From positions 124,001 through 188,000 of the IMG/VR virus record IMGVR_UViG_3300042502_001233: DNA of 64,000 bases, one strand, 5' to 3'. The stretch's first letter is position 1. Every line of letters begins with the position of its first letter. The position numbers and the translations under genes were made by a program. Below, in pieces: positions 545 to 39,597 of the stretch. The notes under the pieces are model-generated. The model saw only the letters and a list, made by a program, of their open reading frames with translations. It made no database searches and was not told the DNA's origin.

Positions 545-1348
545 TTAAATATCTTCTTCTTCATAATCGTCAGCATCAAAACTATTTCTTATTGACGAAT
601 CACTGTAGGTTGAATCTATATCATCTTTTGTCAACACATATTCTTTTGGTTTGTCATCTTTACTCATTACATCATAAGCACCTTCTTTATCACTCCAATA
701 ATCAGTTAACTTTTGAGAATATGGGTAAGAACTCAATGAACGCATTTCTAGTTTTTCAACTGGTGTTGGGTTTCTTTTGATTATTTCTTTTTCCAAACCA
801 TCTATTTTAGCTGTAACCGCATCCATTCTACCTAATTTATTTTCCAAATCAGCTAATTTCTGCATCAATACTTGCGCTACTTTGCTAGATTCTTTTTCAG
901 CGTTTTCAGCCGCTTCTTTTGCTTCTTCAGTTCCTTTTACAATTTGAGATACATCTATTTCAACAGAATCATCAGCTGGTTCTTCCATCGCTGGCTCGGC
1001 TGGTATGTCTTCAGCGCTTGGTTCTGCTGGTGCTTCATCACCACCAAAGCCAAAGTCTAAATCATCCTCAGCTGGTGTTTCATCTGCTGGCGCTTCTGCA
1101 TCTACTGGTGTTTCATCTGAAAGGCCAGTTTCCCCACCCATATCATTAACATCACCACCTTCAGCAGCATCTTGATTTGGGTCTGGAGCGTTAGGGTCTT
1201 CATCCGCTTCTTCCAAGTCAGTTCCTAGAATAAGTGGTTTTTCGTAATCAGACGTTTCTTTCTCAGTATAAAAACTATATTCATTCAACAGTCTGAATCT
1301 TTTAAGTTCTTCGTTAAGTAATTCAGGGTTTAACTTAGTTTTTTTCAT
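545..1348 (-). CDS. Highly acidic protein, possible head scaffold/internal protein
   Basis: 267 aa; D/E/P/A-rich middle, coiled-coil segment, LNEE/LLNE motifs near the N-terminus. Confidence 0.5.
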   Translation of the reverse strand: MKKTKLNPELLNEELKRFRLLNEYSFYTEKETSDYEKPLILGTDLEEADEDPNAPDPNQDAAEGGDVNDMGGETGLSDETPVDAEAPADETPAEDDLDFGFGGDEAPAEPSAEDIPAEPAMEEPADDSVEIDVSQIVKGTEEAKEAAENAEKESSKVAQVLMQKLADLENKLGRMDAVTAKIDGLEKEIIKRNPTPVEKLEMRSLSSYPYSQKLTDYWSDKEGAYDVMSKDDKPKEYVLTKDDIDSTYSDSSIRNSFDADDYEEEDI

Positions 1349-13875: not shown

Positions 13876-16368
13876 TTATCCAGCTATTTTACCATTTTTA
13901 TTCATTTCCAATTGAGAATTAACCATACTAGCGATTTGAGTTCTAAAAGCTGTGGTTTTCATAATTTCCAGGGCTATTGCATTTGTTCCTGGTATATTTA
14001 TATTGATATTACCACTAACATTCATATCACCATGTTCAACTTCCATTTTTGAAGATTGATTACTTTGTTGATTGATTGCTCTATCAGCTGGTCCATATGG
14101 TTCCATAGATAAAAATCTTTCTTTATTAGGTATCGGTGTTATTTTACCATTTTCTAACACTCCTCTACCTTTAGAAAATTCAGCCCCTAACCCTTTTCTA
14201 GGTGCAAATACAGCATCGTTTTGTGGTTCACTAAAATATTCATTATAAGCACCGATACCACCACCAATTAAACCACCAGCCAAAGCACCCCATGGACCGA
14301 ACATCATACCAAGTGCTGCTCCTTGTAACGCAGCGCTACCAACACCCATACCTTTACCCATAGCATCATTAGGGTCATCTCTTTTACCTCTTAAATAATC
14401 AACACCCATACCAGCAGCACCTAAACCTAAACCAGCACCCATTTTAGCACCAGTACCCCATTTATTTAATTTTGTGGCTTCTCTAGCAGAAGCAAATCTA
14501 CCAGCACCCATACTTCTCATAGTTCCATAATCCTTACCAAACCCAGTACCACCTCTATTACTAGCAGCACCACCCATAGAAAACATACCAGGAGAAGCAC
14601 CACCACCAGAAAAACCTTTTGTACCTATATTAAAACCTTTAGCCAAAGCTAATCCGTTAGCAAACCATGTTGCTAATTTTAACGCCCCCCACGTAGCTAA
14701 AATACCTGTAGGTCCTAAAACATCGGCAATAGTAAATATTATTTTACCAGCAGTAACGACAAATTCACCAACTGTTTTAGCAATAGTTTCAATTTTTTCA
14801 CCCCATTTATTTTCTTCCCATTTATCAGTTAATTCATTAAATTCTGGTAATAATTTTTTATTTATTGTATCAACAAAAGGTAATAAATAAATTTTTATAC
14901 CATTAACAAAATTAGTAAAAGCTTCATCAAATGTTAGAGCTTGTTCTGCCCTTTCTTTCATATCAGCTTTTTGTTTCATATCAATTGCTAAAATTTCTTT
15001 ATCAGTTGTAGTTAAAGCGCTAATAAGTTTTGCTTGACCTTTAACCATAACAGTAGCTTTTCCATCTTTAAATTCAGCTGTGTTTGCAATAAATTCTTGT
15101 AATTCTGGACTAACACCACCAACTTGAGCTTTTATTTTACTCAACTTGAATGCTGCTTTACCAGCTTCAACCAATTTTTCATATTCTAAACCTGTTTGTT
15201 GTGCAACTATTTTTAATCTGTGCATTTCCATAGCACCCATTTCAATACTACCATCTTTTCCAAAACTCATAGATTGTTTTGCAGCGTTTGCAATCTCTTC
15301 AGTCAAACCTTCCATATCATTACGAGCCATATACATCAAATGAAACGGGTCAGCCATTTGTGCCCATGCACCACCCATAACTTGCAATTGTGCTGACATA
15401 TCAACAGCGCCTTCAATATCAAATAGTTTATCAGCCATTCCACCAGCGAATTCCATATCAACACCTAGTTTACTAGCTGTCATAGCCATTTTAGCCAAAC
15501 CTTTAACACCGTCTTTAAAACGATATTTATTTAACATTTTAATGTTTCCAGCAATGTTTTTGATTACCTTTGAAGCGTTAAGACCCATAGCGTGAGAATC
15601 ATTCAAAGTTTGATTCATAAAATCACCAGTTTTTTCAGCTGAAATACCTTGTTTGTCCATATCTGCCGCCATTCTAGCAGCACCTTCAGCACCCAAATCA
15701 GCAAACTTGGATAGTTGACCCAAAGCAACAAGACTTTTTTCATTCATTTGAACACTTCTACCTAGTTCTTCACTATAATCAGATTGTATTTTAGATAAAT
15801 CTTGAATTGTAACACCAATTTTTGATGTTTTTTTAGATGCATCAAGAATATTTTTTCTAAACCCTTCAGATTGGTTAGATAAAACACCCATAGACATTGC
15901 TGAATTTTTAATTGCTTTTTCCATTTCAAAAAGACCTAAAGATTTTACGACACCTTTTAAATTATTGAATAAATTAAAAGATGTTTTTAAAGCAGCGGCA
16001 GTGGTTAAAGAAACTTTATTAGCATCTTTAAGGGCAGAATTATATATTTGACCTTGTTTTTTTAATTTTTCATTTTGCTTATCAAGTAAAATTAATTTTT
16101 CTCTATCAATGTCTAATTGATTTTGTTGTTCTTGAGTCAAAATTAAAGTATTGGCTTTTATTTTATCATCAATATCTTTAATTTTTTGTCTTAAATCATT
16201 TGTTAATTTAATACTTTTATTATAAGTTTTTTGTAACTCAGAATATTTTTTAATATTTTCAATATAAGAATCATAGCTACTATTAATTTCTTTTCTTAAA
16301 TCAGCTTCCTTTTCTATATAATAAAGAGCATCTATTGCTTCTTGTTGTGCTTTAGTTTTTTTAGCCAT
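13876..16368 (-). CDS. Tail tape measure protein
   Basis: 830 aa; Ala/Lys/Met-rich helical body with Gly-rich hydrophobic C-terminal segments; lies downstream of the tube and chaperone genes. Confidence 0.75.
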   Translation of the reverse strand: MAKKTKAQQEAIDALYYIEKEADLRKEINSSYDSYIENIKKYSELQKTYNKSIKLTNDLRQKIKDIDDKIKANTLILTQEQQNQLDIDREKLILLDKQNEKLKKQGQIYNSALKDANKVSLTTAAALKTSFNLFNNLKGVVKSLGLFEMEKAIKNSAMSMGVLSNQSEGFRKNILDASKKTSKIGVTIQDLSKIQSDYSEELGRSVQMNEKSLVALGQLSKFADLGAEGAARMAADMDKQGISAEKTGDFMNQTLNDSHAMGLNASKVIKNIAGNIKMLNKYRFKDGVKGLAKMAMTASKLGVDMEFAGGMADKLFDIEGAVDMSAQLQVMGGAWAQMADPFHLMYMARNDMEGLTEEIANAAKQSMSFGKDGSIEMGAMEMHRLKIVAQQTGLEYEKLVEAGKAAFKLSKIKAQVGGVSPELQEFIANTAEFKDGKATVMVKGQAKLISALTTTDKEILAIDMKQKADMKERAEQALTFDEAFTNFVNGIKIYLLPFVDTINKKLLPEFNELTDKWEENKWGEKIETIAKTVGEFVVTAGKIIFTIADVLGPTGILATWGALKLATWFANGLALAKGFNIGTKGFSGGGASPGMFSMGGAASNRGGTGFGKDYGTMRSMGAGRFASAREATKLNKWGTGAKMGAGLGLGAAGMGVDYLRGKRDDPNDAMGKGMGVGSAALQGAALGMMFGPWGALAGGLIGGGIGAYNEYFSEPQNDAVFAPRKGLGAEFSKGRGVLENGKITPIPNKERFLSMEPYGPADRAINQQSNQSSKMEVEHGDMNVSGNININIPGTNAIALEIMKTTAFRTQIASMVNSQLEMNKNGKIAG

Positions 16369-16374
16369 AATCTA

Positions 16375-17349
16375 TTATTGTTGTTTAGTTTGTGTTGGTT
16401 TATACCCGTCTGAATATAAAAACTTAATATTTACATCTTTTTGTCTAGCTTCTTTTATTTTACCATTTATATCATTATAGTTTTTAGCAATATCACATAA
16501 ATAAACATCTTGTTCTGATAATTTTTCTTTAACATAAATCGTAAATCCAACTTTACCGTTAGTTAATACTTTGTATTTATAATCTTTTTCGTCAAATGAG
16601 AATTTTTTATTAACAGCTTCATAAGTTCCACCTCTTTCTAATTCGAAAGTTTTAGTTTTTCCTTGAGCATTTTCATAATATATCGTAATATCTTCAGAAA
16701 CCACACTAAATAAAGCGGTTCTACCAACAATAAATCCGTCACCCAACTCCCTATTTAATTTATTGGAATGAAAACTTGAAAAGAAATTCAATGCGTTTCT
16801 AACACCTTCACCTTCTGCTTTTTTACCCATTAATTCGGAAACAAAAGATTCCCACCATGGCGTATGTTGCATTAATTTTTTTAATTCTGGGTCATTAATT
16901 AAAGCATTATAAACCGTACCAGGTATGTATTTATTTTCTTCACCAGAAGTTTCTGGGTTTTCCCCATTAACATTAGGTTGTTGTTGTTGTTGTTGTTGAG
17001 TTTGATTAACATTACCACCCAAGTTTTCTAGTGCGTTAAGTTGAAAAGGTGTATCAACAACTTCTTGTTTTTTAGAATTATATATTTTAAAATTAATCAT
17101 TTTAGTTGTTTGATTATATGAATTTACATTGAATGTTACCTTGTCACCTTTTTCAGTCTCACCCATCACATTACCGTTTGTTGGGTCTGTGTTTACAACT
17201 TTTACTTTAAGTATTGAATTAACACCTTTAAACGATAAAATATCACCTATTTTAGCTTGTTTAATAGTATTGTTAATATCAGCAGATTCAGTTAATTGAC
17301 TTTGTAATCTAGAATATTGCTCTTCAGTTATGATTAATTTTTTTGCCAT
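16375..17349 (-). CDS. Putative virion/internal head protein
   Basis: 324 aa; leader MAKKLIITEEQY...LTES; late motif upstream; poly-Q linker. Confidence 0.55.
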   Translation of the reverse strand: MAKKLIITEEQYSRLQSQLTESADINNTIKQAKIGDILSFKGVNSILKVKVVNTDPTNGNVMGETEKGDKVTFNVNSYNQTTKMINFKIYNSKKQEVVDTPFQLNALENLGGNVNQTQQQQQQQPNVNGENPETSGEENKYIPGTVYNALINDPELKKLMQHTPWWESFVSELMGKKAEGEGVRNALNFFSSFHSNKLNRELGDGFIVGRTALFSVVSEDITIYYENAQGKTKTFELERGGTYEAVNKKFSFDEKDYKYKVLTNGKVGFTIYVKEKLSEQDVYLCDIAKNYNDINGKIKEARQKDVNIKFLYSDGYKPTQTKQQ

Positions 17350-17384
17350 AATAAAATTCTTTAATTATAAATATCTTATAAAAT

Positions 17385-17409
17385 AAAAATCCCCAAAAAA
17401 TGGGGATTT
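17385..17409 (-). terminator. Intrinsic terminator after the chaperone genes
   Basis: AATCCCCA...TGGGGATT stem with an adjacent U-tract on the minus strand. Confidence 0.6.
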
Positions 17410-17410
17410 A

Positions 17411-17689
17411 TTAATTGAGTGGTATATTACCAGATTTCATTCTTGATTTTAATGCGTCTCCAGAAATGCTTGTTTTTCTATTACCCTTGCTGTTGGTTTG
17501 GTTTTTCTGTATGTTTTCAACCTCTTCTTGTCTTTCAACGTTTTGTTTCATCAATAAACTTAAAAAGAATCTTCTTTCATAAGTCGGCATACACAGTACA
17601 TCTGTGTAAGACATTTTTAAATGTTGCATACAAATATAAACCTCTTCTAATAACGGAACTTTATAGCTTGATGTTAGGCCAAAAAAAGT
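17411..17689 (-). CDS. Tail assembly chaperone C-terminal extension (probably reached by frameshift)
   Basis: Frame overlaps the upstream gene at a T7 run. The track start at 17740 is TTG inside the upstream gene. Sequence LLEEVYICMQHLKMSYTDVLCMPTYERRFFL resembles chaperone 'T' parts. Confidence 0.55.
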   Translation of the reverse strand, partial: TFFGLTSSYKVPLLEEVYICMQHLKMSYTDVLCMPTYERRFFLSLLMKQNVERQEEVENIQKNQTNSKGNRKTSISGDALKSRMKSGNIPLN

Positions 17690-18950
17690 TGAAGTTAAGT
17701 GGAAGAAAGGTGGCCACAGACCCACCCCCAGGAGTCTCAACCTCTATATTCAAATCAATACCAGATTCAATAGAATCAACATATGCATCAAATGCTCTAG
17801 CATCAGATATTCTCATAGAATTAGCGATGTCTCTAATCATTCCTCTATCTCTACTACCGTTTACTTCAACAATCATTCTTTCTAATCTATATGTATTTGA
17901 ATTATTTACTGGGATGTTTCTTTCTTTTTCATCGGTAACAATTTTTTCGATAGCATCTACATCACCCATAGTCAACAATCTGAATTTAATTTCAGCTTTG
18001 GTCAAAGGTAATTGAAAATAAAACAATCCTTCTTCATCTGGATTTTCATTTAACTCTATTGTTTTTAACTCATTAAGGTTAATTTCAGTATCAAAAGGTT
18101 CGCTTAACTCATCCAACAAAGTAACTGGATACATTTCACCATATGCTGTAGCTCTTAACCACAACATAATAGCATTTCTATCACCAGGCAATAAATCTTT
18201 ATATCTAAGCGTCGGTTCCAATATCTTTCTGTTGATAAGAATCTCTAAAAACTCCCCGCTTTGAAGTAAGTTTGGACTTGTAAGAATGTTTTCATCCGCT
18301 GTAGTCATATACGCTAACCTTACACTCTCTTTTTTGTTTTTGTACAATTTACCTTTTGAAGGTAACGGAATAACGTCAAATGGTGCGTTGTAGTTAGGTT
18401 GACTCAATTCTAGAATATAAGGGTCAACACCAGTTTGTGAAGTCACAAAAGGTTCTATTCTAGGTTGTGTAATAGCTGGTGAAGACGGTTGTGGTGTGTT
18501 GTAACCACTTGGTTGATTTGTTTGCATATTTGTTGTTGTATTATATTGTCTATTCATTGCTTCTTCAGACATTTTTTGATAGTTTTGAGTTTGTTGTCTA
18601 TTTTTAGCTAATTGTTCATCTCTCAGTTTCATCAAATCTTCGTTTGGGTCTTTTTGAGTTACAAATCTAGTAGTCTGTCTTTCAGATAACGCTGGGTCTT
18701 TAACAACACCAACAGTGTTTTTCATTTCTAATTGAGCGGCTGTTCTAGCCATCATCATTTCAACACTATTGTTTTGGTTTAGATAATTGTATTGTTCTCC
18801 TTCAACGTTTTCAGGAACTTTTACTGATGAATAAATTTGATTTACTACTTGTGATTTTTCTGCTTCATACGCGGCCAATTTTGATTGTTCTTCTGCTGCG
18901 TTTTGTATTTGTGATTGCGAAGGAATCACGTTAGGTCTTTTTTCTGACAT
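17661..18950 (-). CDS. Tail assembly chaperone / T4 gp26-like baseplate hub assembly protein
   Basis: 429 aa; DVIPLPSKGKLY...MTTADENILTSPNL...DRNAIMLWLR motifs; lies between tube and tape measure; ends FFWP. Confidence 0.65.
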   Translation of the reverse strand: MSEKRPNVIPSQSQIQNAAEEQSKLAAYEAEKSQVVNQIYSSVKVPENVEGEQYNYLNQNNSVEMMMARTAAQLEMKNTVGVVKDPALSERQTTRFVTQKDPNEDLMKLRDEQLAKNRQQTQNYQKMSEEAMNRQYNTTTNMQTNQPSGYNTPQPSSPAITQPRIEPFVTSQTGVDPYILELSQPNYNAPFDVIPLPSKGKLYKNKKESVRLAYMTTADENILTSPNLLQSGEFLEILINRKILEPTLRYKDLLPGDRNAIMLWLRATAYGEMYPVTLLDELSEPFDTEINLNELKTIELNENPDEEGLFYFQLPLTKAEIKFRLLTMGDVDAIEKIVTDEKERNIPVNNSNTYRLERMIVEVNGSRDRGMIRDIANSMRISDARAFDAYVDSIESGIDLNIEVETPGGGSVATFLPLNFNFFWPNIKL

Positions 18951-19033
18951 ATTAAAACTTGTTTATTTTTTATTATAACATTCAAAAATAAATATATAAA
19001 AATAAATTTTTTTGTAAATAGGTATAAAATAAA

Positions 19034-19058
19034 AAAAACCATCTATATAGATGGTTTT
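19034..19058. terminator. Palindromic terminator after the tail tube gene
   Basis: AAAACCATCTAT/ATAGATGGTTTT inverted repeat. Confidence 0.65.
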
Positions 19059-19107
19059 GATATTTATGTTTGTAAAAATTTGTAACTTCTTGATAATCAA
19101 ATAGTTT

Positions 19108-19596
19108 TTAAAACAAAAGTATGGCGCGGTCAAACCTTAACGTTGCAGTAATCTCTGCGATACCGTCATCCTCGAATGATAAGTCACCAAAACCAACGTT
19201 TGTTAACATAGTACCATCCAATAACCATTTCTCGATTACAACACCTGTAGGGTCAAGCATTTCTAACTCTACTGGACGTTTGTAACCAGCAGCATAACCT
19301 TGACGGCCAGTGATTGATTCAGAGTGAAGACGAACCCACTCCATAATTGCTTGTGAAGCAGATGGACCAATTGGGTCACGGAAAGTAACGTCTATCGCCT
19401 CCCAAGTAAATCTACCGATAACCCATGTAGATGTGTTAAGGAAAGGGATTTCTACCTCATTTTGTGTGATAGAAGGTCTAGAAGCAGAAGATAACCACCA
19501 TTGTTGGATACCTAAATCTGCTGGGAATGTAATTAACCAACGATTCTTTTTCTTAGGTTCGTATGGTAAGGGCATTTTCATTAATAAATCAGCCAT
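19108..19596 (-). CDS. Tail tube protein (T4 gp19-like)
   Basis: 162 aa; YEPKKKNRW, SASRP, GRFTWEAIDVTFRDPI, EKWLL...GDL, ITATLRFD motifs. Confidence 0.85.
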   Translation of the reverse strand: MADLLMKMPLPYEPKKKNRWLITFPADLGIQQWWLSSASRPSITQNEVEIPFLNTSTWVIGRFTWEAIDVTFRDPIGPSASQAIMEWVRLHSESITGRQGYAAGYKRPVELEMLDPTGVVIEKWLLDGTMLTNVGFGDLSFEDDGIAEITATLRFDRAILLF

Positions 19597-19602
19597 ATTT
19601 TC

Positions 19603-19633
19603 TTGTTTTTTATTATATTTATTAGTATATTTG
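19603..19633 (+). promoter_or_regulatory. Sigma70-type promoter of endonuclease 1
   Basis: TTG-N20-TATATTTG. Confidence 0.6.
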
Positions 19634-19680
19634 TATACTATTATGTTATTTTATAATAAATATCTAAAACTAAAAAAAAA

Positions 19681-21111
19681 ATGAATAAAAAAGAAAAATT
19701 TATAAATAAAGCAATAATTAAATTTGGTGATAAATTTAATTATGAAGAAATTGATTATATTGATTCTACAAAAAAAATAAAAATAAAATGTAATAAACAT
19801 GACTTATTTTTCTATCAATCCCCGTCTGAACATTTAAGGGGTAAAAATTCTTGTAATGAATGTACTAGAAACCCTAAAGTTAACACAAATTATTTTGTTC
19901 AAAAATCAAAAGAAATTCATGGTGATAAATATGATTATTCATTAACTAACTATATTGATTCATCAACAAAAGTAGATGTTATATGTAAAGAACATGGTGT
20001 TTTTAGTGTATTACCAAATAACCACTACAAACAAAATTGTCCAAAATGTAAAGAAAAAGATAGATATTTAACAACTAAAGATTTTATTGATAAAGCATGT
20101 ACCTTACATAATAAATATGATTATTCTGAAACAGAATATATGAATTCAAAAACTAAAATTAATATAAATTGCAAAGAACATGGTGTTTTTAAACAAATTC
20201 CCAACGACCATTTAAATGGGAAAGGTTGTCCAAAATGTGGTTTAGCTTATAATAAAATGGAAGATGAAATAAAAGAATTTATTAAATCTTTAAACATAAA
20301 TATTATAGAAAATTCAAAACAAATAATATCACCGTTAGAATTAGATATATTTATACCATCACATAATTTAGCTATTGAGTTTGATGGTTTATATTGGCAT
20401 TCTGAAGTTTATAAAGATAAAAATTATCATTTAAAAAAAACTGAACTTTGTCAAAGTAAAAATATTAGGTTAATTCATATATTTGAAGATGAATGGTTAT
20501 CTAAAAAAGAAATAGTTAAATCTAGATTAAAAAATATGTTAGGTTTAACACCAAATAAAATATATGGTAGAAAATGTGTTATAACAAAAGTTACAGCTAA
20601 AGAAACTAAAATATTTTTAGAAAATAATCACATACAAGGTAACGTTAATTCTAAAGTTAGGTTAGGGTTATATTATAATAATGAATTGGTTAGTCTTATG
20701 ACATTTGGCGGGTTAAGAAAAAACCTAGGGAATACATCAAACGAAAATAAATATGAGCTGTTTAGATTTTGTAATTTATCTAATCATATAATAATTGGTG
20801 GTGCAGATAAGTTGCTTAAATATTTTATCAAACATTATAAACCAAAAGAAATAATTAGCTACGCTGACAGAAGATGGTCACAAGGTGATTTATATAATAA
20901 ATTAAATTTTATTTTTTCACATAACACAAAACCAAATTATTTTTATTTGGTTAACGATAAAAGGGAAAATAGATTTAATTATAGAAAAGATATATTGGTC
21001 AAAGAAGGTTTTGATAAAAACAAAACAGAACATGGTATAATGTTAGAAAGAAAATTATATAGAATATATGATTGTGGTAGTATGTGTTTTAAAATTAAAA
21101 TGACCGATTAA
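19681..21111 (+). CDS. Free-standing endonuclease 1 (Zn-ribbon repeats + Vsr/PD-(D/E)XK-like nuclease + GNAT/Mom-like C-terminal domain)
   Basis: Three C..H...H...CPKC repeats; LDIFIP...AIEFDGLYWH; ELFRFC...GGADKL...SYADRRWSQGDLY; antisense to its neighbours. Confidence 0.75.
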   Translation: MNKKEKFINKAIIKFGDKFNYEEIDYIDSTKKIKIKCNKHDLFFYQSPSEHLRGKNSCNECTRNPKVNTNYFVQKSKEIHGDKYDYSLTNYIDSSTKVDVICKEHGVFSVLPNNHYKQNCPKCKEKDRYLTTKDFIDKACTLHNKYDYSETEYMNSKTKININCKEHGVFKQIPNDHLNGKGCPKCGLAYNKMEDEIKEFIKSLNINIIENSKQIISPLELDIFIPSHNLAIEFDGLYWHSEVYKDKNYHLKKTELCQSKNIRLIHIFEDEWLSKKEIVKSRLKNMLGLTPNKIYGRKCVITKVTAKETKIFLENNHIQGNVNSKVRLGLYYNNELVSLMTFGGLRKNLGNTSNENKYELFRFCNLSNHIIIGGADKLLKYFIKHYKPKEIISYADRRWSQGDLYNKLNFIFSHNTKPNYFYLVNDKRENRFNYRKDILVKEGFDKNKTEHGIMLERKLYRIYDCGSMCFKIKMTD

Positions 21112-21123
21112 TCGGTCATTTTA
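21096..21123. terminator. Perfect 28-bp palindrome / bidirectional terminator
   Basis: TAAAATGACCGATTAATCGGTCATTTTA; contains the stop codon of endonuclease 1. Confidence 0.75.
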
Positions 21124-21124
21124 T

Positions 21125-23626
21125 TTAACTTAACATAATTTTTTTTATTCTATTTAATTCTTCCATCAATTTATAGTTCTCATTTAAATCCATACTGTAT
21201 TGACCTTTATCATTTGGTTGAGGTTCAGCACTAGTTTGAGATGGATTTTTTTGTCTAGGCGCTGCACTAACATTTCGTTTTGTTTGTTTAGTTTTACTTT
21301 GTTTACCACTAGCAGCAGCTTGTTTTCTAAGTTTAACCATGTATTGAAACAACGCTATTGAATCATCCAAAAATTGTAATAAATGTTTTTTAAATTTCTT
21401 TCTGTCTTGAGCATTTTTTTCGAATTGTGTTCTAGCAGCATTAGGGTCGGCTTCATTCATTTTACCAATACCACCTAATTTATCAATTAGACCAGATTGT
21501 TTGTATTTACCAGTGTATATTGTTTTGAATATATCATTGATAAAGTTAGCCATATTTTGATATGCTTGTTGGTTTACAGTTACTATGTTGAACATTTTAT
21601 TAAAATCAGTCTTAACTATAGGGTTTTGTCTAAATCTTTCCAAAAATTGGTCAAAAACTTTATCACCAGTTGGTTTAAGGTTTCTAATTTTATTTCTTAA
21701 CTGTTCAACTCTGTTTAATAAATTTTCAAATTCTACAACTCTAGTTGGGCTAACGTTTTTGTTCAAAAACTTAACCAAAGCTTTATCTCTAAAGTATTTT
21801 GCTTCATCCAACATCTCTTCATCCAACAATGCTTCAGCTAAAGTATTTTTAGGTCCTTTACCAAATTTTTTCTCACTGTTAACAATAAAACCAAATAAAT
21901 TACGTAAAGAGTTGTATAAATCATCATTCATTGCTCCATCAGCGCTATTATCAGTTTTTGTTGTTTTTTGTTTTCCAGTATCTACTCCAGTTCCAGTGTC
22001 TACTCCTGTATCTACACCAGTTCCAGTATCTACACCAGTATCTGTACCAGTATCTACACCAGTATCTGTACCAGTATCGTTTCCTGTTTCATCACCTGTT
22101 GGGGCTGGTATCAAACCAACACCACCATCTAACCCACGCATAGATTGATACAACGCGTTAAGTGTTGCAGCTCTTGATGATTTTTGACCTTTCATTCTAA
22201 CCAATTTAACAGCAGCACCAGTAGCTAACAACCCAATACCAACACCAGCTAACACAGGACCTAAACCTATTAACTTACCAGCTAACGCAGTACCAGCTCC
22301 TTTTACAAGCGTTTTAGTTGCTTGTTTAACAACAATAGTTGCAAAGAATTTAGCAGAACTAGATACACCAAATAGGTTTTGTCCACCACTCATACTACCA
22401 AAAGTTTGGTCAGCTTTGTTGAATAAATCACCCATACTAGCTTGAGGGTTAGAACTAATCATTTGTTGTAATTTTTGCATTTGACCCATTGAGTCGCCAC
22501 CACCATTACCATCAAACATGTGACTAACGTTTTCTGAACCAAATTTGTCAACAAATTGCTGCATATCAGCACCAGTTTTAATATCTTTACCCATTAACTT
22601 ACTAGCCCAATGAACAAAACCTTGTTTGTCATCTGGTCCACCAGTAATATCTTGAGTTATAGCTGGTGTTCTAACTATTTTATCACCACCACCTAGTACC
22701 GTTTCTAACCAAGTTTTAAACCATTCAGTTTGAGCCATCCATCCTAATGCACCTAACGCAGCACCAGTTCCAGCCAATATCAATGGTAATTTGTTAGATT
22801 TAAGGGTATCCATCCTTGTACTATCAAAATCTTCACCATCACCTCTTTTAGCTTGTAATTTAGACCTAATATCACCAGAATCTAAAGGGTCTTCGTCAGG
22901 GGCTACGTCTTCATAATCAACATCTTCAATATCGTTATTTGATTTATAGTTACCAGCACTACCTTGTCCACTAACTTTTGGCCCAGTAGTACCCATTTGT
23001 GAATTACCAGTTCTAGCTGGAAGAGCTTCATCTATACCAAAATATTCATCAATTTGACACATTTGTTCTTCATCAAGGTCATATTCTTCATTCATCAAAT
23101 CATCTTCACCTAGTTTGTCTTCACTCTCATCAAAACCAGAATAAACAGCAGCTAAGTCAGTATCTAAGAATTTTTTTGTGTAGTCTCTTAAATCAGTAAT
23201 AATACCATTAGCAGCGTCAATCGGCATATAACCTTCTTCCTGTGGTGCTTTTTTAGTTGCAGCAACAACTGAATCATATATTGCAGCGATTTCCATAACA
23301 GTTTTTAAGAATTGTTGTGGGTCTTTATTATTAGGGAAATCAGGATTTTCTTCTCTAATTTTAGAATCAAGATTTTTAATTAACTCATTACCTTCTTTAT
23401 CAATAATTTGTTGGATTTTTCTTGCAGCTTCTTGGTCAATTTTACCTTTTCCGAAAATTTTACCGTTGGCTTTGTATCTACCTAATTTAGATAATCCGTA
23501 TTTTACAGAATCCCAAAAACCTTCATCTAACCTTTCGTTACCTTCTATCTTTTCTAGTGTTTCTTTAAGGATTTCATTGATGATAACTGTATGTTGTTGT
23601 TCTGTAAGTATTAATTTTTTAGCCAT
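21125..23626 (-). CDS. Putative internal head/ejection protein with hydrophobic helices and DTG repeats
   Basis: 833 aa; leader MAKKLILTEQQ; many (L/I/M)xE motifs; two Gly/Ala-rich hydrophobic stretches. Confidence 0.55.
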   Translation of the reverse strand: MAKKLILTEQQHTVIINEILKETLEKIEGNERLDEGFWDSVKYGLSKLGRYKANGKIFGKGKIDQEAARKIQQIIDKEGNELIKNLDSKIREENPDFPNNKDPQQFLKTVMEIAAIYDSVVAATKKAPQEEGYMPIDAANGIITDLRDYTKKFLDTDLAAVYSGFDESEDKLGEDDLMNEEYDLDEEQMCQIDEYFGIDEALPARTGNSQMGTTGPKVSGQGSAGNYKSNNDIEDVDYEDVAPDEDPLDSGDIRSKLQAKRGDGEDFDSTRMDTLKSNKLPLILAGTGAALGALGWMAQTEWFKTWLETVLGGGDKIVRTPAITQDITGGPDDKQGFVHWASKLMGKDIKTGADMQQFVDKFGSENVSHMFDGNGGGDSMGQMQKLQQMISSNPQASMGDLFNKADQTFGSMSGGQNLFGVSSSAKFFATIVVKQATKTLVKGAGTALAGKLIGLGPVLAGVGIGLLATGAAVKLVRMKGQKSSRAATLNALYQSMRGLDGGVGLIPAPTGDETGNDTGTDTGVDTGTDTGVDTGTGVDTGVDTGTGVDTGKQKTTKTDNSADGAMNDDLYNSLRNLFGFIVNSEKKFGKGPKNTLAEALLDEEMLDEAKYFRDKALVKFLNKNVSPTRVVEFENLLNRVEQLRNKIRNLKPTGDKVFDQFLERFRQNPIVKTDFNKMFNIVTVNQQAYQNMANFINDIFKTIYTGKYKQSGLIDKLGGIGKMNEADPNAARTQFEKNAQDRKKFKKHLLQFLDDSIALFQYMVKLRKQAAASGKQSKTKQTKRNVSAAPRQKNPSQTSAEPQPNDKGQYSMDLNENYKLMEELNRIKKIMLS
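21978..22082 (-). repeat. In-frame DTG(T/V) tandem repeat
   Basis: Encodes DTGTDTGVDTGTDTGVDTGTGVDTGVDTGTGVDTG. Confidence 0.85.
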
Positions 23627-23696
23627 ATTAAACTTTTAATTATAAATATTTGATATTAATTAAAAAGTTCGTATCTTTGTAGATAAAACCATTATT

Positions 23697-23972
23697 ATGA
23701 TTACAAAAGACCAATTATTTGAACAATACGATAAAAAAGTTGACGCTATATTAGATGTGTGTGATTGGAAAACAAATTTTACCAGTGAAGAAGTTTGTGG
23801 TATTGTTTATAAAATCCTAGAACAGAATAAAATAAACACTTCAATACCAGTTGAAGAGTTCCATAATCTTTATTCGGAAGCTGTGGATAAAATATGGACT
23901 AGTGATATAACAATGCGACAAATAACCGACATTGTTTACGATACATTACTTTCTAAGAATATTGTTGAGTAA
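23697..23972 (+). CDS. Hypothetical early protein
   Basis: 91 aa; TTG-N19-TATCTTTG at 23650-23679. Confidence 0.6.
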   Translation: MITKDQLFEQYDKKVDAILDVCDWKTNFTSEEVCGIVYKILEQNKINTSIPVEEFHNLYSEAVDKIWTSDITMRQITDIVYDTLLSKNIVE

Positions 23973-24356
23973 CCCAGATTCAGTCAACTCATCTTCCATA
24001 CCCAAAGCTTTTGCGTATTGATTAAAATTGCTAACTATTTTTTGGTAGTTTTTAATCATTTTTTTGTGTGGTTCAATCATTCCTTTGGTTTCCAAGTCTT
24101 GAATCAATTCTTCGCGCTTTTTAGGGTCTGAAATAATAGTTTTGATGTTAGACATCGCTTTAGTACTGTTAGTGGCTTTATCAGCGTCTATTTTGTTCTG
24201 TTTGGTTAAATTAATACCTAATATCTTTGCAAAACCCATAAGAGTTAACTTATCATGATTAAATGATATTTCTTTGTCTTCCACAAGCATTCTTTCTTTT
24301 TGTTCGTGGATTAAAATTCTTTGATATTGTTCTTTGGTAATCTTTAACTTTGTCAT
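23946..24356 (-). CDS. Putative internal head protein (true start probably MTKLKITKEQY at 24356)
   Basis: Late motif at 24368-24375 lies just upstream of this ATG; same leader as 16375 and 21125. Confidence 0.6.
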   Translation of the reverse strand: MTKLKITKEQYQRILIHEQKERMLVEDKEISFNHDKLTLMGFAKILGINLTKQNKIDADKATNSTKAMSNIKTIISDPKKREELIQDLETKGMIEPHKKMIKNYQKIVSNFNQYAKALGMEDELTESGLLNNILRK

Positions 24357-24432
24357 AATCTTTTTACTATAAATATCATATAAAACAAAAAAGCTCCCAT
24401 ATTTGGAAGCTTTGATGTTTTGTTTATTTTTA

Positions 24433-26361: not shown

Positions 26362-29202
26362 TTATATATTATCAAAAGAAGCACCAGTATTCATGATAAC
26401 AAACTCAAGTTGAATAAACTCTAAAGCTCTAGTTGGCTTCAAGAAAATTTGACCTGTAAGTTGATTTCTGTCGATATCTTCTGGGTCGTTTGAAAGAACC
26501 ACTCTAAAGTCTGTAAGACCTCTTTCACTTCTAATGTTATCTAAGATTGGGTTAACCAACGCTAAGAATTGATTTCTAACCACGTTATCATTTTGTTCAA
26601 ACAACAATCTGATAGAAACAGCAGAGATAAGTTTTCTTGCTTGTAACAACAATCTTCTTACGTTAATTCTGTCAAGAGCAGACTCTTTAACTTGCATTGT
26701 TTTATTACCCCAGATTTTAATACCATCTGTTGTAAACGTAGCGATTGGGTTGATTCTAGCTTCGTACAACGTATCTCTTTCAGCAAGAGTAAGTTTTTTA
26801 CGAGCTTGGATTGCATCAACATCACCTCTGTTAATACCAGCAACCGCGAACCAAGGGAAAGCAATGTTGTCAGTAAGAGCGATGTTTCTAACTACATCTC
26901 TTGTTGGCGGCATCCAAATGTAAACGTTGTTTTCTGTATCGTTTACTTGAATCCATGGCCAATAAGTACAAGAGTAGTTACTATCATACATACCATCTAA
27001 ACGGTCAGAAACTTCTTCAGCGCTTATTACATCACCAGATAAATCAGTATCTGGTGTTGTCATAATGTACAACGAGTCAGCTCTATCTTGTTCAACCATA
27101 TCGATTGTAGCTTCAATTAAGTTGCTGTTGTAATCGTTGTCGATACCTGGGGTTGCGAATACGTTAATATTAACAGCTTCTGGGTTTCTAAATGTCCAAA
27201 TAGCTTCTAGGTAAGCATAGTAATCAGAGTTGATACCAATATCACCGTTAGTAAGAGTTCTATATTTGAATATTTCACTTTGTAAACCAGCTTGTCCGTT
27301 AGTACCATTTACGACGAAACTATCTAAATTACTTCTTCTAGTTCTGTAAATATCCCAACCATCAAAACCACCGTAAGGTACAAATGTAAATTTACGTGCA
27401 AATATTTTTTCATAGTCAGTTCCTAACACACCAGCTTCAGTTCTAAACTCAGCATTACCAGTATCAAATAGGAATACTGGAGAATATGTGTCACCACTTG
27501 AGTTAATAACAATTTTAACATTGTCAATTGTAGCACCAGTAGCGTCAATATCCATGTGGAAACCATGTGTCATACCAGTCCACATATTTGAATCACCAAC
27601 TGTTGGAATACCTTTATAGTCAAAGAAATCAGAATCAATACCTAAAGTCTCAGAAAGACCTAAGAAAACTTTACGTTTATTTTCAAAAGCGCTATACGCT
27701 CTTTTATACGTTAACGTTGGGTCAACAACTGATTGTCCGTTTGAATCGTAATCTCTAATAGGGAAACCAATAAAACCAGCTGGGAAAGTTGTGCTAGTAT
27801 CACTAGTGTCATCCATTTCAATAAGAACGTAAGATGATTTTGAAGGGTATTCACCATTATAAGTACCAATTCTTCTAGCTATATAGTTGTTAGATGTTGG
27901 GTCAAGAGTACAACGACTAAAGCTTTCCAAGATTGTTGGTTGAGCGTCAGTATCGAAATAACTTCTTATAATAACATCAAACTCTTTAGTGTCTAATTTA
28001 ATATTTCTAATAGATATTTTGAATTGTTCGTTAGCAGCGTTACCATCAGAAATAGTCCAAAATCTGAATAATCTCAATACTTTAGTACCACGTAATTCTG
28101 ATACAACATATGGAGTTACAGCTGGGCTGTATTCTTGTAAGTAATCATCAAAACTTCTGTCATAATCAACAAGAGCTTGTTTTAAACCTCTGATTTTACC
28201 AGCTGCTCTGTCATCTTTAAACATTTCTCTATAGAATTCTTCAACAAACAAAGCTGTATTACCATCATCGTTAGTTCTACCTAATACTCTAGGTAAATAA
28301 TTTTGTTTTGTATTATCCATAGATAGTTGGTAACTAAACGCACCTTGTGTTGTTGATGTACCAGTCAATACAAAATCACCAACAGGGTTTGTAGTAGAAG
28401 TTGTAATACTTGTACTGAAATTTACGTTAGTTGAAGCTGTTATTTCAAATGCTGGAGATTGTAAAGTTGGGTCAACAGAACCTCTAGAACGTAACAACGC
28501 AACCAATTTATCTTCAATACCGCTATAAACAGTACCTGAATAAGTTACTGTAACACCAGTTGTAGAACCTGTTACAAAACCACCTGAAGTACCTACTGAA
28601 GTTACTTTTAAATCAAAAGAAATACCGTTAAAATTAGCACCCACTTTTTCATAATAAGGACCAACACTAACAACATCATTTACAGATGAAGTAGCCAAGA
28701 ATGCTAATTCAGAAGTCAATGTACCATCATTGATAAGTGTTTGAATCAAAGGAACTGAAGAAACAACTGTTACGTTAGTACCACCAGTTGTTGCTGTAAA
28801 TGTTATGAAATTTGAAGTTACTGAAGTTCCAGTGTTTGTTGTTACAACCGAAGCTGGGTCCAAAGCAGCATCCAAAGTGATACCCCATGCAAAACCAGCA
28901 TCATATCCAGAAAACCCTAATACTCTAGTTACGAATAATTGGTTTGATTGTGTTAAATATGATTTAGCGATGTATGGTAATTCATATTTAGGTGCCCCTG
29001 TGTCTTTAACTCTAGTCGCATTTTGCCCACCAAAGAAAGATTGGAACTCGCCATAGTTACCAACAAATATAGGTTGGAATGCTGGACCAATTGTAGTCTC
29101 ACCAACTAAACCTAATGTTGTTACACCTATCTGACGTGTGATAAAAGATAAGTCTTTTTCTGAAGTATATACACCAGGACTTACGAATACTTTTGTTGCC
29201 AT
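26362..29202 (-). CDS. Tail sheath protein
   Basis: 946 aa; VFVSPGVYTSEKD, GLVGETTIGPAF, YWPWI, PWFAVAG..RG, WGNKT, LDRINVRRLL, KPTRALEFI. Confidence 0.92.
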   Translation of the reverse strand: MATKVFVSPGVYTSEKDLSFITRQIGVTTLGLVGETTIGPAFQPIFVGNYGEFQSFFGGQNATRVKDTGAPKYELPYIAKSYLTQSNQLFVTRVLGFSGYDAGFAWGITLDAALDPASVVTTNTGTSVTSNFITFTATTGGTNVTVVSSVPLIQTLINDGTLTSELAFLATSSVNDVVSVGPYYEKVGANFNGISFDLKVTSVGTSGGFVTGSTTGVTVTYSGTVYSGIEDKLVALLRSRGSVDPTLQSPAFEITASTNVNFSTSITTSTTNPVGDFVLTGTSTTQGAFSYQLSMDNTKQNYLPRVLGRTNDDGNTALFVEEFYREMFKDDRAAGKIRGLKQALVDYDRSFDDYLQEYSPAVTPYVVSELRGTKVLRLFRFWTISDGNAANEQFKISIRNIKLDTKEFDVIIRSYFDTDAQPTILESFSRCTLDPTSNNYIARRIGTYNGEYPSKSSYVLIEMDDTSDTSTTFPAGFIGFPIRDYDSNGQSVVDPTLTYKRAYSAFENKRKVFLGLSETLGIDSDFFDYKGIPTVGDSNMWTGMTHGFHMDIDATGATIDNVKIVINSSGDTYSPVFLFDTGNAEFRTEAGVLGTDYEKIFARKFTFVPYGGFDGWDIYRTRRSNLDSFVVNGTNGQAGLQSEIFKYRTLTNGDIGINSDYYAYLEAIWTFRNPEAVNINVFATPGIDNDYNSNLIEATIDMVEQDRADSLYIMTTPDTDLSGDVISAEEVSDRLDGMYDSNYSCTYWPWIQVNDTENNVYIWMPPTRDVVRNIALTDNIAFPWFAVAGINRGDVDAIQARKKLTLAERDTLYEARINPIATFTTDGIKIWGNKTMQVKESALDRINVRRLLLQARKLISAVSIRLLFEQNDNVVRNQFLALVNPILDNIRSERGLTDFRVVLSNDPEDIDRNQLTGQIFLKPTRALEFIQLEFVIMNTGASFDNI

Positions 29203-29352
29203 ATTTTTGTCTTTTTTATATGTTATTATTTACTTTATAGTTTTGTTTATTATAAATATTCATTTTTTTTCAAAAGTAGAGTAGACATAGAATATAAATC
29301 AGAATTAGTATGATTTTTTTCATACTTTTGTATACTTATTAGTAAAAACACT

Positions 29353-39324: not shown

Positions 39325-39597
39325 ATGGTAACAATTTACACAATGCAAAACTGCCCATATTGTGCAGAATTAAAAGAACTTCTAACTACTGAAAATATCG
39401 AATTTAACGATATAGATATTTTTGACAAAAAACATGAAAAAGAAGTTGGAGAAATAATGGAAGCGTCAAAAGCTGAAGAAGTTCCAATAGTTAGGATTGA
39501 AAAACAATTATTCATCCCTAACGTTTCTTTTAAAAGTATTACAGAAGCTTGCTATTTGGTTAAAAAAATATTAAGTGATTCCGATATAACTTCATAA
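39325..39597 (+). CDS. Glutaredoxin (NrdH-like)
   Basis: YTMQNCPYC active site, VP motif. Confidence 0.85.
   Translation: MVTIYTMQNCPYCAELKELLTTENIEFNDIDIFDKKHEKEVGEIMEASKAEEVPIVRIEKQLFIPNVSFKSITEACYLVKKILSDSDITS

What the first reader, a model, noticed from the sequence alone, without database searches (positions are those of the whole stretch)
16375..24356. Unrelated proteins share a K-K-L-x-I/L-T-x-E-Q leader: possible capsid-targeting and cleavage signal
The N-termini are MAKKLIITEEQYSRL...LTES (17349), MAKKLILTEQQHTVI...LDEG (23626) and MTKLKITKEQYQRI...LVED (24356). Related (L/I)xE-rich helices occur in 545..1348 (LLNEELKRFRLLNEY), 21125 (LMEELNRIKKIM), 54586 (LSEEISNMKYLI), 55491 (ILEE...ISEG) and 55993 (INES). 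The T4 prohead protease cleaves after (I/L)-x-E, and T4 internal proteins use a short capsid-targeting leader (established). These may be a portable tag for loading cargo into the head.
Basis: partly seen in the sequence, partly recalled or inferred. Interest (0 to 1): 0.6.

Follow-up and report, generated by a model that had tools for sequence, protein, structure and literature searches.

The report
Portable N-terminal leader on phage proteins
Three unrelated late proteins of a 362-kb T4-like jumbo phage start with the same ~20-residue tag; the tag is virus-specific, sits on many different proteins in uncultured phages, and most likely loads them into the capsid, where a T4-type protease trims it off, though no experiment has shown this.

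Summary
The core observation is real. The genes at 16375-17349, 21125-23626 and 23946-24356 (all minus strand) begin with M-x-K-[LI]-x-[IL]-T-[EK]-x-Q-[YH]. Beyond about residue 36 they share no similarity. Two more genes of the same 362-kb virus carry the tag; one is an ArdC-like protein.

The tag is widespread. A degenerate DNA pattern found at least 119 stretches in viral contigs. 76 of 92 matches lie at the start of an ORF, against 6 of 81 in prokaryote genomes. The cargo is very diverse. Codon choice at the invariant residues is free, so selection acts on the protein.

The genome has a T4-type head module with a Peptidase_S77 protease. The capsid protein has L-T-E where T4 gp23 is cut. 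The tag contains I-T-E, the site at which T4 Alt is cut, and is usually followed by [LI]-x-E. In one cargo family the extension ends in L-T-E exactly where leaderless homologues start.

A second leader (MK-x-x-IK-x-LLRE) behaves the same way, and the two swap on one cargo.

Best reading, at about 0.55: a new sequence class of T4-like capsid-targeting propeptide. Cleavage and packaging are inferred, not shown.

The parts
16375..17349 (-). 324-aa leader-bearing protein, immediately upstream of the tape-measure gene. Model: SH3-like barrel, Q-rich linker, helices, C-terminal beta sandwich. No family assigned.
   Evidence: ORF. No Pfam or PHROG hit. In the orthologue alignment A1, 10 of 14 invariant columns lie in residues 1-21. 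Model pLDDT 69. Fold searches uninformative.
17287..17349 (-). Leader of the 324-aa protein, residues 1-21: the K-L-I-I-T-E-E-Q-Y core, then L-T-E at residues 19-21.
   Evidence: M1, K4, I6, I7, T8, E9, Q11, Y12 and E21 are invariant and L19 is at least 90% conserved in 12 orthologues of 27-93% identity. Two orthologues lack the next domain but keep the leader.
17366..17374 (-). Promoter-like motif ATATTTATA, 16 nt upstream of the 324-aa gene and preceded by a hairpin plus T-run.
   Evidence: The same motif stands before the sheath, tube, protease and scaffold genes.
21125..23626 (-). 833-aa leader-bearing protein between the sheath and tube genes. It has a conserved N-domain, an acidic stretch, two hydrophobic segments (about 280-298 and 444-478) and a variable DTG repeat.
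   Evidence: No relative in cultured phages.
23522..23626 (-). Leader of the 833-aa protein, residues 1-35: the K-L-I-L-T-E-Q-Q-H core, then an invariant L-D-E at 33-35 in front of the conserved KYGLSKLGRYK block.
   Evidence: Alignment A3: T8, Q11, L33, D34 and E35 are invariant in 7 orthologues of 45-93% identity.
23641..23649 (-). Promoter-like motif ATATTTATA, 14 nt upstream of the 833-aa gene.
23946..24356 (-). 136-aa leader-bearing small helical protein downstream of the sheath gene.
   Evidence: In alignment A4, 7 of 18 invariant columns lie in residues 1-15.
24279..24356 (-). Leader of the 136-aa protein, residues 1-26: the K-L-K-I-T-K-E-Q-Y core, then I-H-E at 16-18 and L-V-E at 24-26.
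   Evidence: Every orthologue has [LI]-x-E right after Q-Y-x-x-[IL]-L.
24368..24376 (-). Promoter-like motif ATATTTATA, 11 nt upstream of ATG 24356.
26362..29202 (-). Context: tail sheath gene.
   Evidence: PHROG 23, E 9e-60.
19108..19596 (-). Context: tail tube gene.
   Evidence: PHROG 4542, E 9e-26.
13876..16368 (-). Context: tape-measure gene.
   Evidence: PHROG 167, E 3e-12.

Best explanation
The shared N-terminus is a portable propeptide of about 15-35 residues: a new sequence class of T4-style capsid-targeting leader. Proposed mechanism (inferred): the genes are transcribed from the same promoter-like motif as the virion genes. The leader (consensus M-K-I-I-I-T-E-x-Q-Y-x-x-L-L-x-E) brings the attached protein into the scaffolding core of the prohead. 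The T4 gp21-type serine protease encoded in the genome then removes the leader after a Glu in an [LI]-x-E context: the internal I-T-E and/or the [LI]-x-E that ends the leader. The mature cargo stays with the DNA and enters the host at infection. The cargo includes an ArdC-like 821-aa protein, an 833-aa protein with hydrophobic segments, and small proteins. A second leader, MK-x-x-IK-x-LLRE, on about 12 other genes would work the same way. Shown: the motif, its strict N-terminal position, its modularity, protein-level selection, its restriction to viruses, the T4-type head genes, and the positions of [LI]-x-E. Inferred: late expression, targeting, cleavage and injection.
For: 1) Five proteins that are unrelated beyond the leader share it at residues 2-3.
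2) The leader is the most conserved part of the 324-aa and 136-aa families. Some 324-aa homologues lack the next domain but keep the leader.
3) A DNA pattern for K-[LIVFM]-x-I-T-E-x-Q-Y found at least 119 viral stretches. 76 of 92 matches are within 6 codons of the first ATG of an ORF, against 6 of 81 in prokaryote genomes. There are 78 distinct leaders on cargo of 41-926 aa with 6% mean column identity.
4) Codon entropy at the invariant I, T, Q and Y equals that of the gene bodies.
5) The genome encodes Peptidase_S77 (91.7 bits), a T4-type portal and a Gp23-type capsid protein. All 5 of 5 leader-bearing virus records that are at least 90% complete also encode S77.
6) The capsid protein has L-T-E at residue 60, directly before the stretch that aligns with the N-terminal region of mature T4 gp23.
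7) T4's own sites, read from NC_000866: Alt I-T-E-6, IPI I-T-E-19, IPII/III I-A-E-10, gp24 L-R-E-10, gp23 L-T-E-65. These are confirmed as cleavage sites in PMC5694885 and PMC9026906. The leader's invariant core contains I-T-E. In leader 2 the R-E of L-R-E is invariant and the L at least 90% conserved.
8) 61 of 78 leaders have [LIVMF]-x-E ending 13-18 residues after the motif's first Lys. L-x-E is invariant or nearly so in the 324-aa and 833-aa orthologues.
9) HVA1-family cargo starts at M-A-x-Y-x-G in phages that are not T4-like. In leader-bearing phages and in a Kyanoviridae phage it is preceded by an extension ending L-T-E|A-E-Y-Q-G. The Kyanoviridae extension begins like the T4 CTS.
10) One Zn-ribbon cargo carries leader 1 in one contig and leader 2 in others (E 3e-11).
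11) Cargo domains are of effector type: ArdC-N, ART-PolyVal, NUDIX, lysozyme, M78, patatin, GNAT. PMC5512222 predicts that ArdC and ART-PolyVal domains are packaged. No sheath, tube, portal or capsid protein carries the tag.
12) 4 of 5 leader-1 genes and 6 of 12 leader-2 genes have the ATATTTAT[AT] motif that also precedes the sheath, tube, protease and scaffold genes. The rest lie just downstream of such a gene on the same strand.
13) In one relative a leader gene lies two genes upstream of the protease.
Against: There are no proteomic or N-terminomic data for this virus or any relative, and no cultured relative of the focal proteins was found. The three focal genes keep conserved synteny inside the tail module, between sheath, tube and tape measure, down to about 40% identity. 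A prohead protease never meets tail proteins. [LI]-x-E is frequent (1.43 per 100 aa), and helical, Glu-rich N-termini will often contain it by chance. 9 of 78 leaders have no such site within 26 residues. Two focal leaders read I-T-K-E instead of I-T-E. The leader does not resemble the T4 CTS in sequence. Co-occurrence with S77 may only reflect shared ancestry. The promoter motif also precedes homing endonucleases and other non-structural genes, so it does not prove virion association. The complex prediction of protease with leader gave no answer.
Confidence: 0.55

Rival explanations
1. The leader is a retained docking or assembly peptide. It would plug different proteins into one common partner in the tail or baseplate, or bind a common chaperone, as short conserved N-termini anchor different tailspikes to an adaptor in some phages. 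It would not be cleaved.
For: Three of the five genes lie in conserved synteny between sheath, tube, a hub-like gene and the tape measure. The 324-aa gene sits where tail assembly chaperones or hub subunits usually sit. The invariant Q-Y behind I-T-E is not explained by what is known of gp21 specificity. The 833-aa protein is conserved along its whole length.
Against: Most cargo elsewhere consists of small enzymes or unknown proteins far from tail genes, often in tandem arrays. The other two genes of this genome are not in the tail module. The HVA1 extension ends in L-T-E exactly at the domain start. No recognised tail protein carries the tag. T4 itself places alt beside baseplate genes 48 and 54, so position is weak evidence.
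Confidence: 0.2
2. The leader is a recognition tag for some other machinery, such as a chaperone, regulated proteolysis or degron, export, or localisation in the infected cell. It would be unrelated to the capsid.
For: Cargo includes NUDIX, GNAT, kinase and DHH enzymes that need not be packaged. Up to 11 leader genes occur in one genome. Nothing computed here shows physical association with proheads.
Against: It is not a Sec, Tat or lipoprotein signal: mean hydropathy of the first 20 residues is -1.0 to 0.4 and there is no hydrophobic core. The Glu in an [LI]-x-E context is the shared feature of both leader families and matches the T4 protease rule. The same cargo carries a T4-CTS-like N-terminus in a Kyanoviridae phage. 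The genes use the promoter motif of virion genes.
Confidence: 0.15
3. The similarity is a nucleic-acid feature: a mobile promoter plus start-codon cassette, or a translation-initiation ramp for leaderless or Shine-Dalgarno-less mRNAs. The encoded peptide would have no function of its own.
For: The genes have a hairpin, a promoter-like motif and very short 5' leaders (3-16 nt), and the leader codons are A/U-rich. T4-type phages are known to shuffle genes with regulatory cassettes (own knowledge).
Against: Synonymous codon choice at the invariant residues is as varied as in gene bodies: I 1.36 vs 1.34 bits, T 1.62 vs 1.76, Y 0.82 vs 0.72. 40% of same-residue codon pairs differ. The residues stay invariant across orthologues of 27-45% identity.
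Confidence: 0.03

Closest known systems
[quoted passage not shown]
   Same: It is a short N-terminal tag shared by otherwise unrelated proteins and it ends in [LI]-x-E. It occurs in a phage with a gp21-type protease, gp22-type core and gp23-type shell. The cargo is diverse and includes anti-defence proteins. The genes sit in variable loci, sometimes in tandem.
   Different: The sequence is different: T4 has M-K-T-Y-Q-E-F-I-A-E, here it is M-K-I-I-I-T-E-x-Q-Y-x-x-L-L-x-E. The new leader is longer (about 15-35 vs 10-19 residues). It spreads over many uncultured phages, including jumbo phages, and carries larger cargo (up to 926 aa). Function is untested. The second leader family (MK-x-x-IK-x-LLRE) is closer in length and style to the T4 CTS and to the gp24 propeptide.
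T4 Alt, an ADP-ribosyltransferase that is packaged and injected and is cut at I-T-E-6 and L-T-E-619 (PMC5694885)
   Same: A large effector with an N-terminal [LI]-I-T-E. The alt gene lies beside baseplate genes. An ART-PolyVal protein of this genome carries leader 2.
   Different: Alt's propeptide is only 6 residues and has no Q-Y-x-x-L-L-x-E part. There is no sequence homology with the focal proteins.
Long propeptides of ejection and inner-body proteins of phiKZ, 201phi2-1 and SPN3US (PMC5694885, PMC7411985)
   Same: Jumbo phages in which many head-internal or ejected proteins lose N-terminal propeptides, cut after Glu by a gp21-related protease. SPN3US gp47 is an ejection protein with a propeptide and a transmembrane domain, like the 833-aa protein here.
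   Different: Those propeptides are 100 residues or longer, are not one shared short motif, and are cut at S/A/G-x-E. This phage has a canonical S77 protease and a gp23-type capsid protein.
Polyvalent proteins and their solo domains (Iyer et al. 2017, PMC5512222)
   Same: ArdC-N plus a zincin-like HExxH in the 821-aa protein, and ART-PolyVal and NUDIX among the leader-2 cargo. These domains are predicted to be delivered with the DNA.
   Different: That work describes domain content, not a shared N-terminal leader. Most cargo found here has no known domain.
Conserved N-terminal anchor peptides of exchangeable tailspikes or tail fibres (own knowledge, not tested here)
   Same: A short conserved N-terminus on unrelated proteins that serves as a docking module.
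   Different: Those proteins are receptor-binding proteins and keep their N-terminus. Here no cargo looks like a fibre or spike, and the leader ends in a protease-type site.

Membership tests
T4-type capsid-targeting propeptide (CTS) | The tag lies at the extreme N-terminus of otherwise unrelated proteins. | tested here: met
   Five of five hits are at residues 2-3. There is no similarity beyond residue 36. 76 of 92 viral matches are at the ORF start.
T4-type capsid-targeting propeptide (CTS) | The same genome encodes a gp21-type prohead protease, a scaffolding core and a gp23-type shell. | tested here: met
   Peptidase_S77 91.7 bits, Portal_T4 245 bits, Gp23 244 bits. A scaffold-like 449-aa gene lies between the protease and capsid genes, with 3.3 [LI]-x-E per 100 aa.
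T4-type capsid-targeting propeptide (CTS) | The tag ends in the protease's [LI]-x-E motif. | tested here: met
   I-T-E lies in the core. L-T-E-21, L-D-E-35 and L-V-E-26 occur in the focal proteins and are conserved in orthologues. 61 of 78 leaders have such a site. This is at the sequence level only.
T4-type capsid-targeting propeptide (CTS) | Sequence similarity to the T4 CTS (M-K-T-Y-Q-E-F-I-A-E). | tested here: not met
   Leader 1 shares only the Glu-terminated hydrophobic pattern, and I-T-E with Alt and IPI. This is why it is filed as a new variant and not as a member of the same sequence family.
T4-type capsid-targeting propeptide (CTS) | The tag is removed in the mature virion protein. 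| not testable with these tools
   No proteomics exist for this virus or its relatives. There is only the indirect HVA1 boundary argument.
T4-type capsid-targeting propeptide (CTS) | The tag is sufficient to package a foreign protein. | not testable with these tools
   This needs a cultured phage and a fusion experiment.
T4-type capsid-targeting propeptide (CTS) | The genes are expressed late, with the head genes. | tested here: inconclusive
   The ATATTTAT[AT] motif is shared with the sheath, tube, protease and scaffold genes. It also precedes homing endonucleases. No expression data were examined.
Polyvalent-protein-type injected effectors | The cargo carries domains of that repertoire. | tested here: met
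   This holds for the 821-aa protein (ArdC-N, 27.6 bits against a cut-off of 22.6) and for leader-2 cargo (ART-PolyVal E 7e-17, NUDIX). It does not hold for the three focal proteins, which have no domain hit.
Tail assembly chaperone or tail hub protein | Gene position next to the tube and tape-measure genes, and a matching fold or family. | tested here: inconclusive
   The position fits. There is no family hit. The model matches nothing above noise: Foldseek TM about 0.1, best Z 6.7 for an SH3-like barrel.
Sec, Tat or lipoprotein signal peptide | A hydrophobic core of 10 or more residues after a basic N-region. | tested here: not met
   The leader is amphipathic and charged, with mean hydropathy -1.0 to 0.4. 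True lipoprotein-like N-termini in this genome form a separate cluster.

The most novel reading that the evidence does not exclude
Two previously undescribed short leaders (M-K-I-I-I-T-E-x-Q-Y-x-x-L-L-x-E and M-K-x-x-I-K-x-L-L-R-E) are the capsid-loading signals of a large, mostly uncultured clade of T4-related phages, many of them jumbo. If so, the set of proteins these phages inject could be read from sequence alone, and the leaders would be interchangeable handles for packaging foreign proteins. That set comprises many cargo families, most of unknown function, plus ArdC-like, ART, NUDIX, lysozyme, peptidase and phospholipase domains.
Probability: 0.5. Interest if true: 0.75.

Novelty: new variant of a known kind. 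Interest (0 to 1): 0.65.

Why it matters
Proteins that a phage injects along with its DNA are its first weapons against host defences, yet they are almost impossible to recognise from sequence. In T4 the only common mark is the 10-residue CTS. A sequence-defined leader that is virus-specific, strictly N-terminal and spread over many uncultured phages would give a direct computational handle on that hidden set of injected proteins. It would flag dozens of unknown protein families as candidate early effectors or anti-defence factors. It would also offer new packaging tags for phage engineering. More broadly, it would show that the T4 principle of a targeting peptide plus Glu-specific trimming was reinvented or diversified with different sequences across the T4 supergroup.

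Tried and rejected
- Complex prediction of the S77 protease (alignment A2) with residues 1-45 of the 324-aa protein: verdict 'no answer' (score 0.00). It is not evidence either way.
- Structure of the 324-aa protein searched against PDB by Foldseek, PDB by VIA wide, BFVD and the ESM Atlas: nothing above noise. The best hit was Z 6.7, with a TraI translocation-signal SH3-like domain, which is within the noise range the tool states. The fold does not settle head versus tail.
- Feature search of the 833-aa protein in the ESM Atlas: nothing.
- Megablast of the region and tblastn of the 833-aa protein and of a 195-aa cargo family against cultured phages: no match. No published virion proteome can therefore be brought to bear.
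- Literature search for the motif letters: no paper holds them.
- An HMM built only from the pattern-selected leaders was too strict. It finds only the two genes with exact I-T-E-x-Q-Y. The local matrix is the better detector for the K and H variants.
It was corrected and re-sent.

Full report
**Setting.** The window is bases 124001-188000 of a 362,018-bp virus record with 31% G+C, estimated complete. The finding lies in a tail module on the minus strand:
- sheath, 26362-29202
- a 136-aa gene, 23946-24356
- an 833-aa gene, 21125-23626
- tube, 19108-19596
- a weakly gp26/hub-like 429-aa gene, 17661-18950
- a 324-aa gene, 16375-17349
- tape measure, 13876-16368

Two large HNH/DUF723 homing-endonuclease-like genes are inserted on the plus strand. 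The sheath is of the T4 supergroup type, and no cultured phage is close.

**The observation.**
- A position matrix made from them, run over all 494 called genes of the genome, finds five proteins at 28-37 bits, all at residues 2-3. The next hit scores 14 bits, and shuffled proteomes give 0-1 windows of 16 bits or more.
- The two extra members are an 821-aa protein (genome 72141-74606) and a 112-aa protein (genome 246013-246351).
- Unsupervised clustering of all N-termini returns the same group.
- Beyond residue 36 the five proteins are unrelated.
[LI]-x-E alone occurs 1.43 times per 100 residues.

**Conservation.** In 12 homologues of the 324-aa protein (27-93% identity), 10 of the 14 invariant columns lie in residues 1-21. 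Two homologues lack the following domain but keep the leader. In the 136-aa family, 7 of 18 invariant columns lie in residues 1-15. In the 833-aa family the core T and Q and an L-D-E at 33-35 are invariant. All three genes keep their leader and their synteny in related contigs down to about 40% identity.

- Of 92 matches in the 80 loci returned, 76 lie within six codons of the first ATG of their ORF. Most read M-K-I-I-I-T-E-[SNE]-Q-Y.
- They give 78 distinct leaders on cargo of 41-926 residues, with 6% mean column identity.
- The same pattern in prokaryote genomes gave 6 of 81 near a first ATG, mostly in tiny ORFs. The N-terminal leader is therefore a feature of viruses.
- Codon choice at the invariant I, T, E, Q and Y is about as varied as in the gene bodies, so selection is on the peptide and not on DNA or mRNA.
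- Some contigs carry two or three leader genes in tandem, and one protein has the leader twice.

**A second leader.** The same clustering exposed about 12 genes of this genome, all outside the window, that start M-K-x-x-I-K-x-L-L-R-E. A DNA pattern for it hit at least 118 viral stretches, 72 of 89 at the first ATG. One Zn-ribbon cargo carries leader 1 in one contig and leader 2 in others, including this genome (E 3e-11 and 5e-11). The alignment places the K-L-I-E of leader 1 on the K-L-L-R-E of leader 2. The two leaders are therefore interchangeable modules that share a basic-L-L-x-E end.

**Head machinery and cleavage logic.** The genome encodes a T4-type portal, a Peptidase_S77 prohead protease, a scaffold-like protein rich in [LI]-x-E, and a Gp23-type capsid protein.
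- The capsid protein has L-T-E at residue 60, directly before the segment that aligns with the N-terminal part of mature T4 gp23.
- From the T4 record itself, the known gp21 sites are I-T-E-6 in Alt, I-T-E-19 in IPI, I-A-E-10 in IPII and IPIII, L-R-E-10 in gp24 and L-T-E-65 in gp23. The rule L/I-x-E and the Alt site are stated in PMC9026906 and PMC5694885.
- Leader 1 has I-T-E in its invariant core. In 61 of 78 cases a further [LIVMF]-x-E ends 13-18 residues after the motif's first Lys. In leader 2 the R-E of L-R-E is invariant and the L nearly so.
- All five leader-bearing virus records that are at least 90% complete encode S77. In one of them a leader gene lies two genes upstream of the protease.

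**The most telling comparison.** One cargo, an HVA1-family domain, starts directly at M-A-x-Y-x-G in two phages that are not T4-like. In leader-1 phages it is preceded by a 38-residue extension that begins with the leader and ends L-L-T-E|A-E-Y-Q-G. In a Kyanoviridae phage the same domain is preceded by an extension that begins M-K-K-F-K-Q-Y-I-D-E, which is T4-CTS-like, and ends L-E-L-T-E|A-E-Y-Q-G. Cutting after that Glu would leave almost exactly the N-terminus of the leaderless homologues.

**Cargo and expression.** The 821-aa protein has an ArdC-N domain and an HExxH motif. Leader-2 genes of this genome include an ART-PolyVal protein and a kinase/2H-phosphoesterase. Across the viral sets:
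- leader 1: lysozyme (3), M78 peptidase, DHH
- leader 2: NUDIX (6), ART-PolyVal (2), patatin, GNAT, kinase

Most cargo is unknown, and no canonical structural protein is among them. ArdC and ART-PolyVal domains are among those predicted to be delivered with the DNA (PMC5512222).

Four of five leader-1 genes and six of twelve leader-2 genes have the motif ATATTTAT[AT] 3-16 nt before the ATG. The others lie just downstream of such a gene on the same strand. The motif also precedes the sheath, tube, protease and scaffold genes. It occurs 30 times in the window against 11.2 +/- 3.4 expected.

**Interpretation.** The best reading (0.55) is a new sequence class of T4-style capsid-targeting propeptide that the S77 protease removes after Glu. 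Targeting, cleavage, late timing and injection are all inferred. The main reservation is the conserved position of the three focal genes inside the tail module. A retained docking peptide for a tail or chaperone partner (0.2), or a tag for other machinery (0.15), cannot be excluded. T4's own alt gene lies beside baseplate genes, so position is weak evidence. A nucleic-acid explanation is essentially excluded.

**What did not help.** The protease-leader complex prediction gave no answer. The 324-aa model matched nothing above noise. The Atlas search was empty. No cultured relative and no paper with the motif was found.

**Novelty.** The principle is known: the T4 CTS, and the propeptides of phiKZ-like phages. 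This sequence family appears not to be described, nor its breadth, its twin leader, or the cargo catalogue. I file it as a new variant of a known kind, interest 0.65.

Noticed in passing
whole genome, outside the window (e.g. genome 207708-208448, 208451-208897, 210527-211306, 239644-240180, 352281-353762): A second N-terminal leader family, M-K-x-x-I-K-x-L-L-R-E, sits on about 12 unrelated genes. These include an ART-PolyVal protein and a gene directly beside the capsid gene. It is also found in at least 118 viral stretches, and it resembles the T4 gp24 propeptide end L-L-R-E.
   Followed up: partly
window 17366-17374, 23641-23649, 24368-24376, 29251-29259, 19655-19663 and 25 more: The promoter-like motif ATATTTAT[AT] occurs 30 times in the window against 11 expected. 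Genome-wide, 93 of 153 copies lie within 80 nt upstream of a same-strand gene start. The spacing has two modes, 11-16 nt and 3 nt; the 3-nt class would give leaderless mRNAs.
   Followed up: partly
window 19681-21111 (+), 24525-26333 (+), 39552-40640 (-): Large homing-endonuclease-like genes (PHROG 559, E 1e-131 to 1e-164; repeated DUF723/treble-clef fingers) are inserted between tail genes. Each has its own promoter-like motif. More paralogues occur elsewhere in the genome.
   Followed up: no
L103:10524-12053: A homologue of the 324-aa protein carries the leader twice in tandem: the core motif at residue 2 and again at residue 20.
   Followed up: no
G005 (268,739-bp virus record), loci L169 and L172: One complete jumbo record has two S77 protease genes, each next to a scaffold-like gene. 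The second pair is more divergent (44% identity).
   Followed up: no
window 21125-23626, residues about 520-560 of the product: A (T/V)DTG repeat tract varies greatly in length between orthologues. The protein also has two hydrophobic segments and a conserved C-terminal K-L-M-E-E-x-x-R-I-K-K-I-M-L-S.
   Followed up: partly
genome 212119-214008 (capsid gene, outside the window): The Gp23-type capsid protein has 629 residues. Pfam matches it in two stretches with a large insertion between them, suggesting an extra domain relative to T4 gp23.
   Followed up: no
genome 324-701, 268028-268402, 274163-274555, 279624-279887, 286650-287033: A group of small proteins has lipoprotein- or secretion-type signal peptides of a Bacteroidota-like style. 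Together with the absence of Shine-Dalgarno sequences, this hints at a Bacteroidota host.
   Followed up: no
window 23946-24356, residues 124-126 of the product: The 136-aa protein also has L-T-E ten residues from its C-terminus. This recalls the C-terminal L-T-E-619 processing of T4 Alt. It is not conserved in distant orthologues.
   Followed up: no
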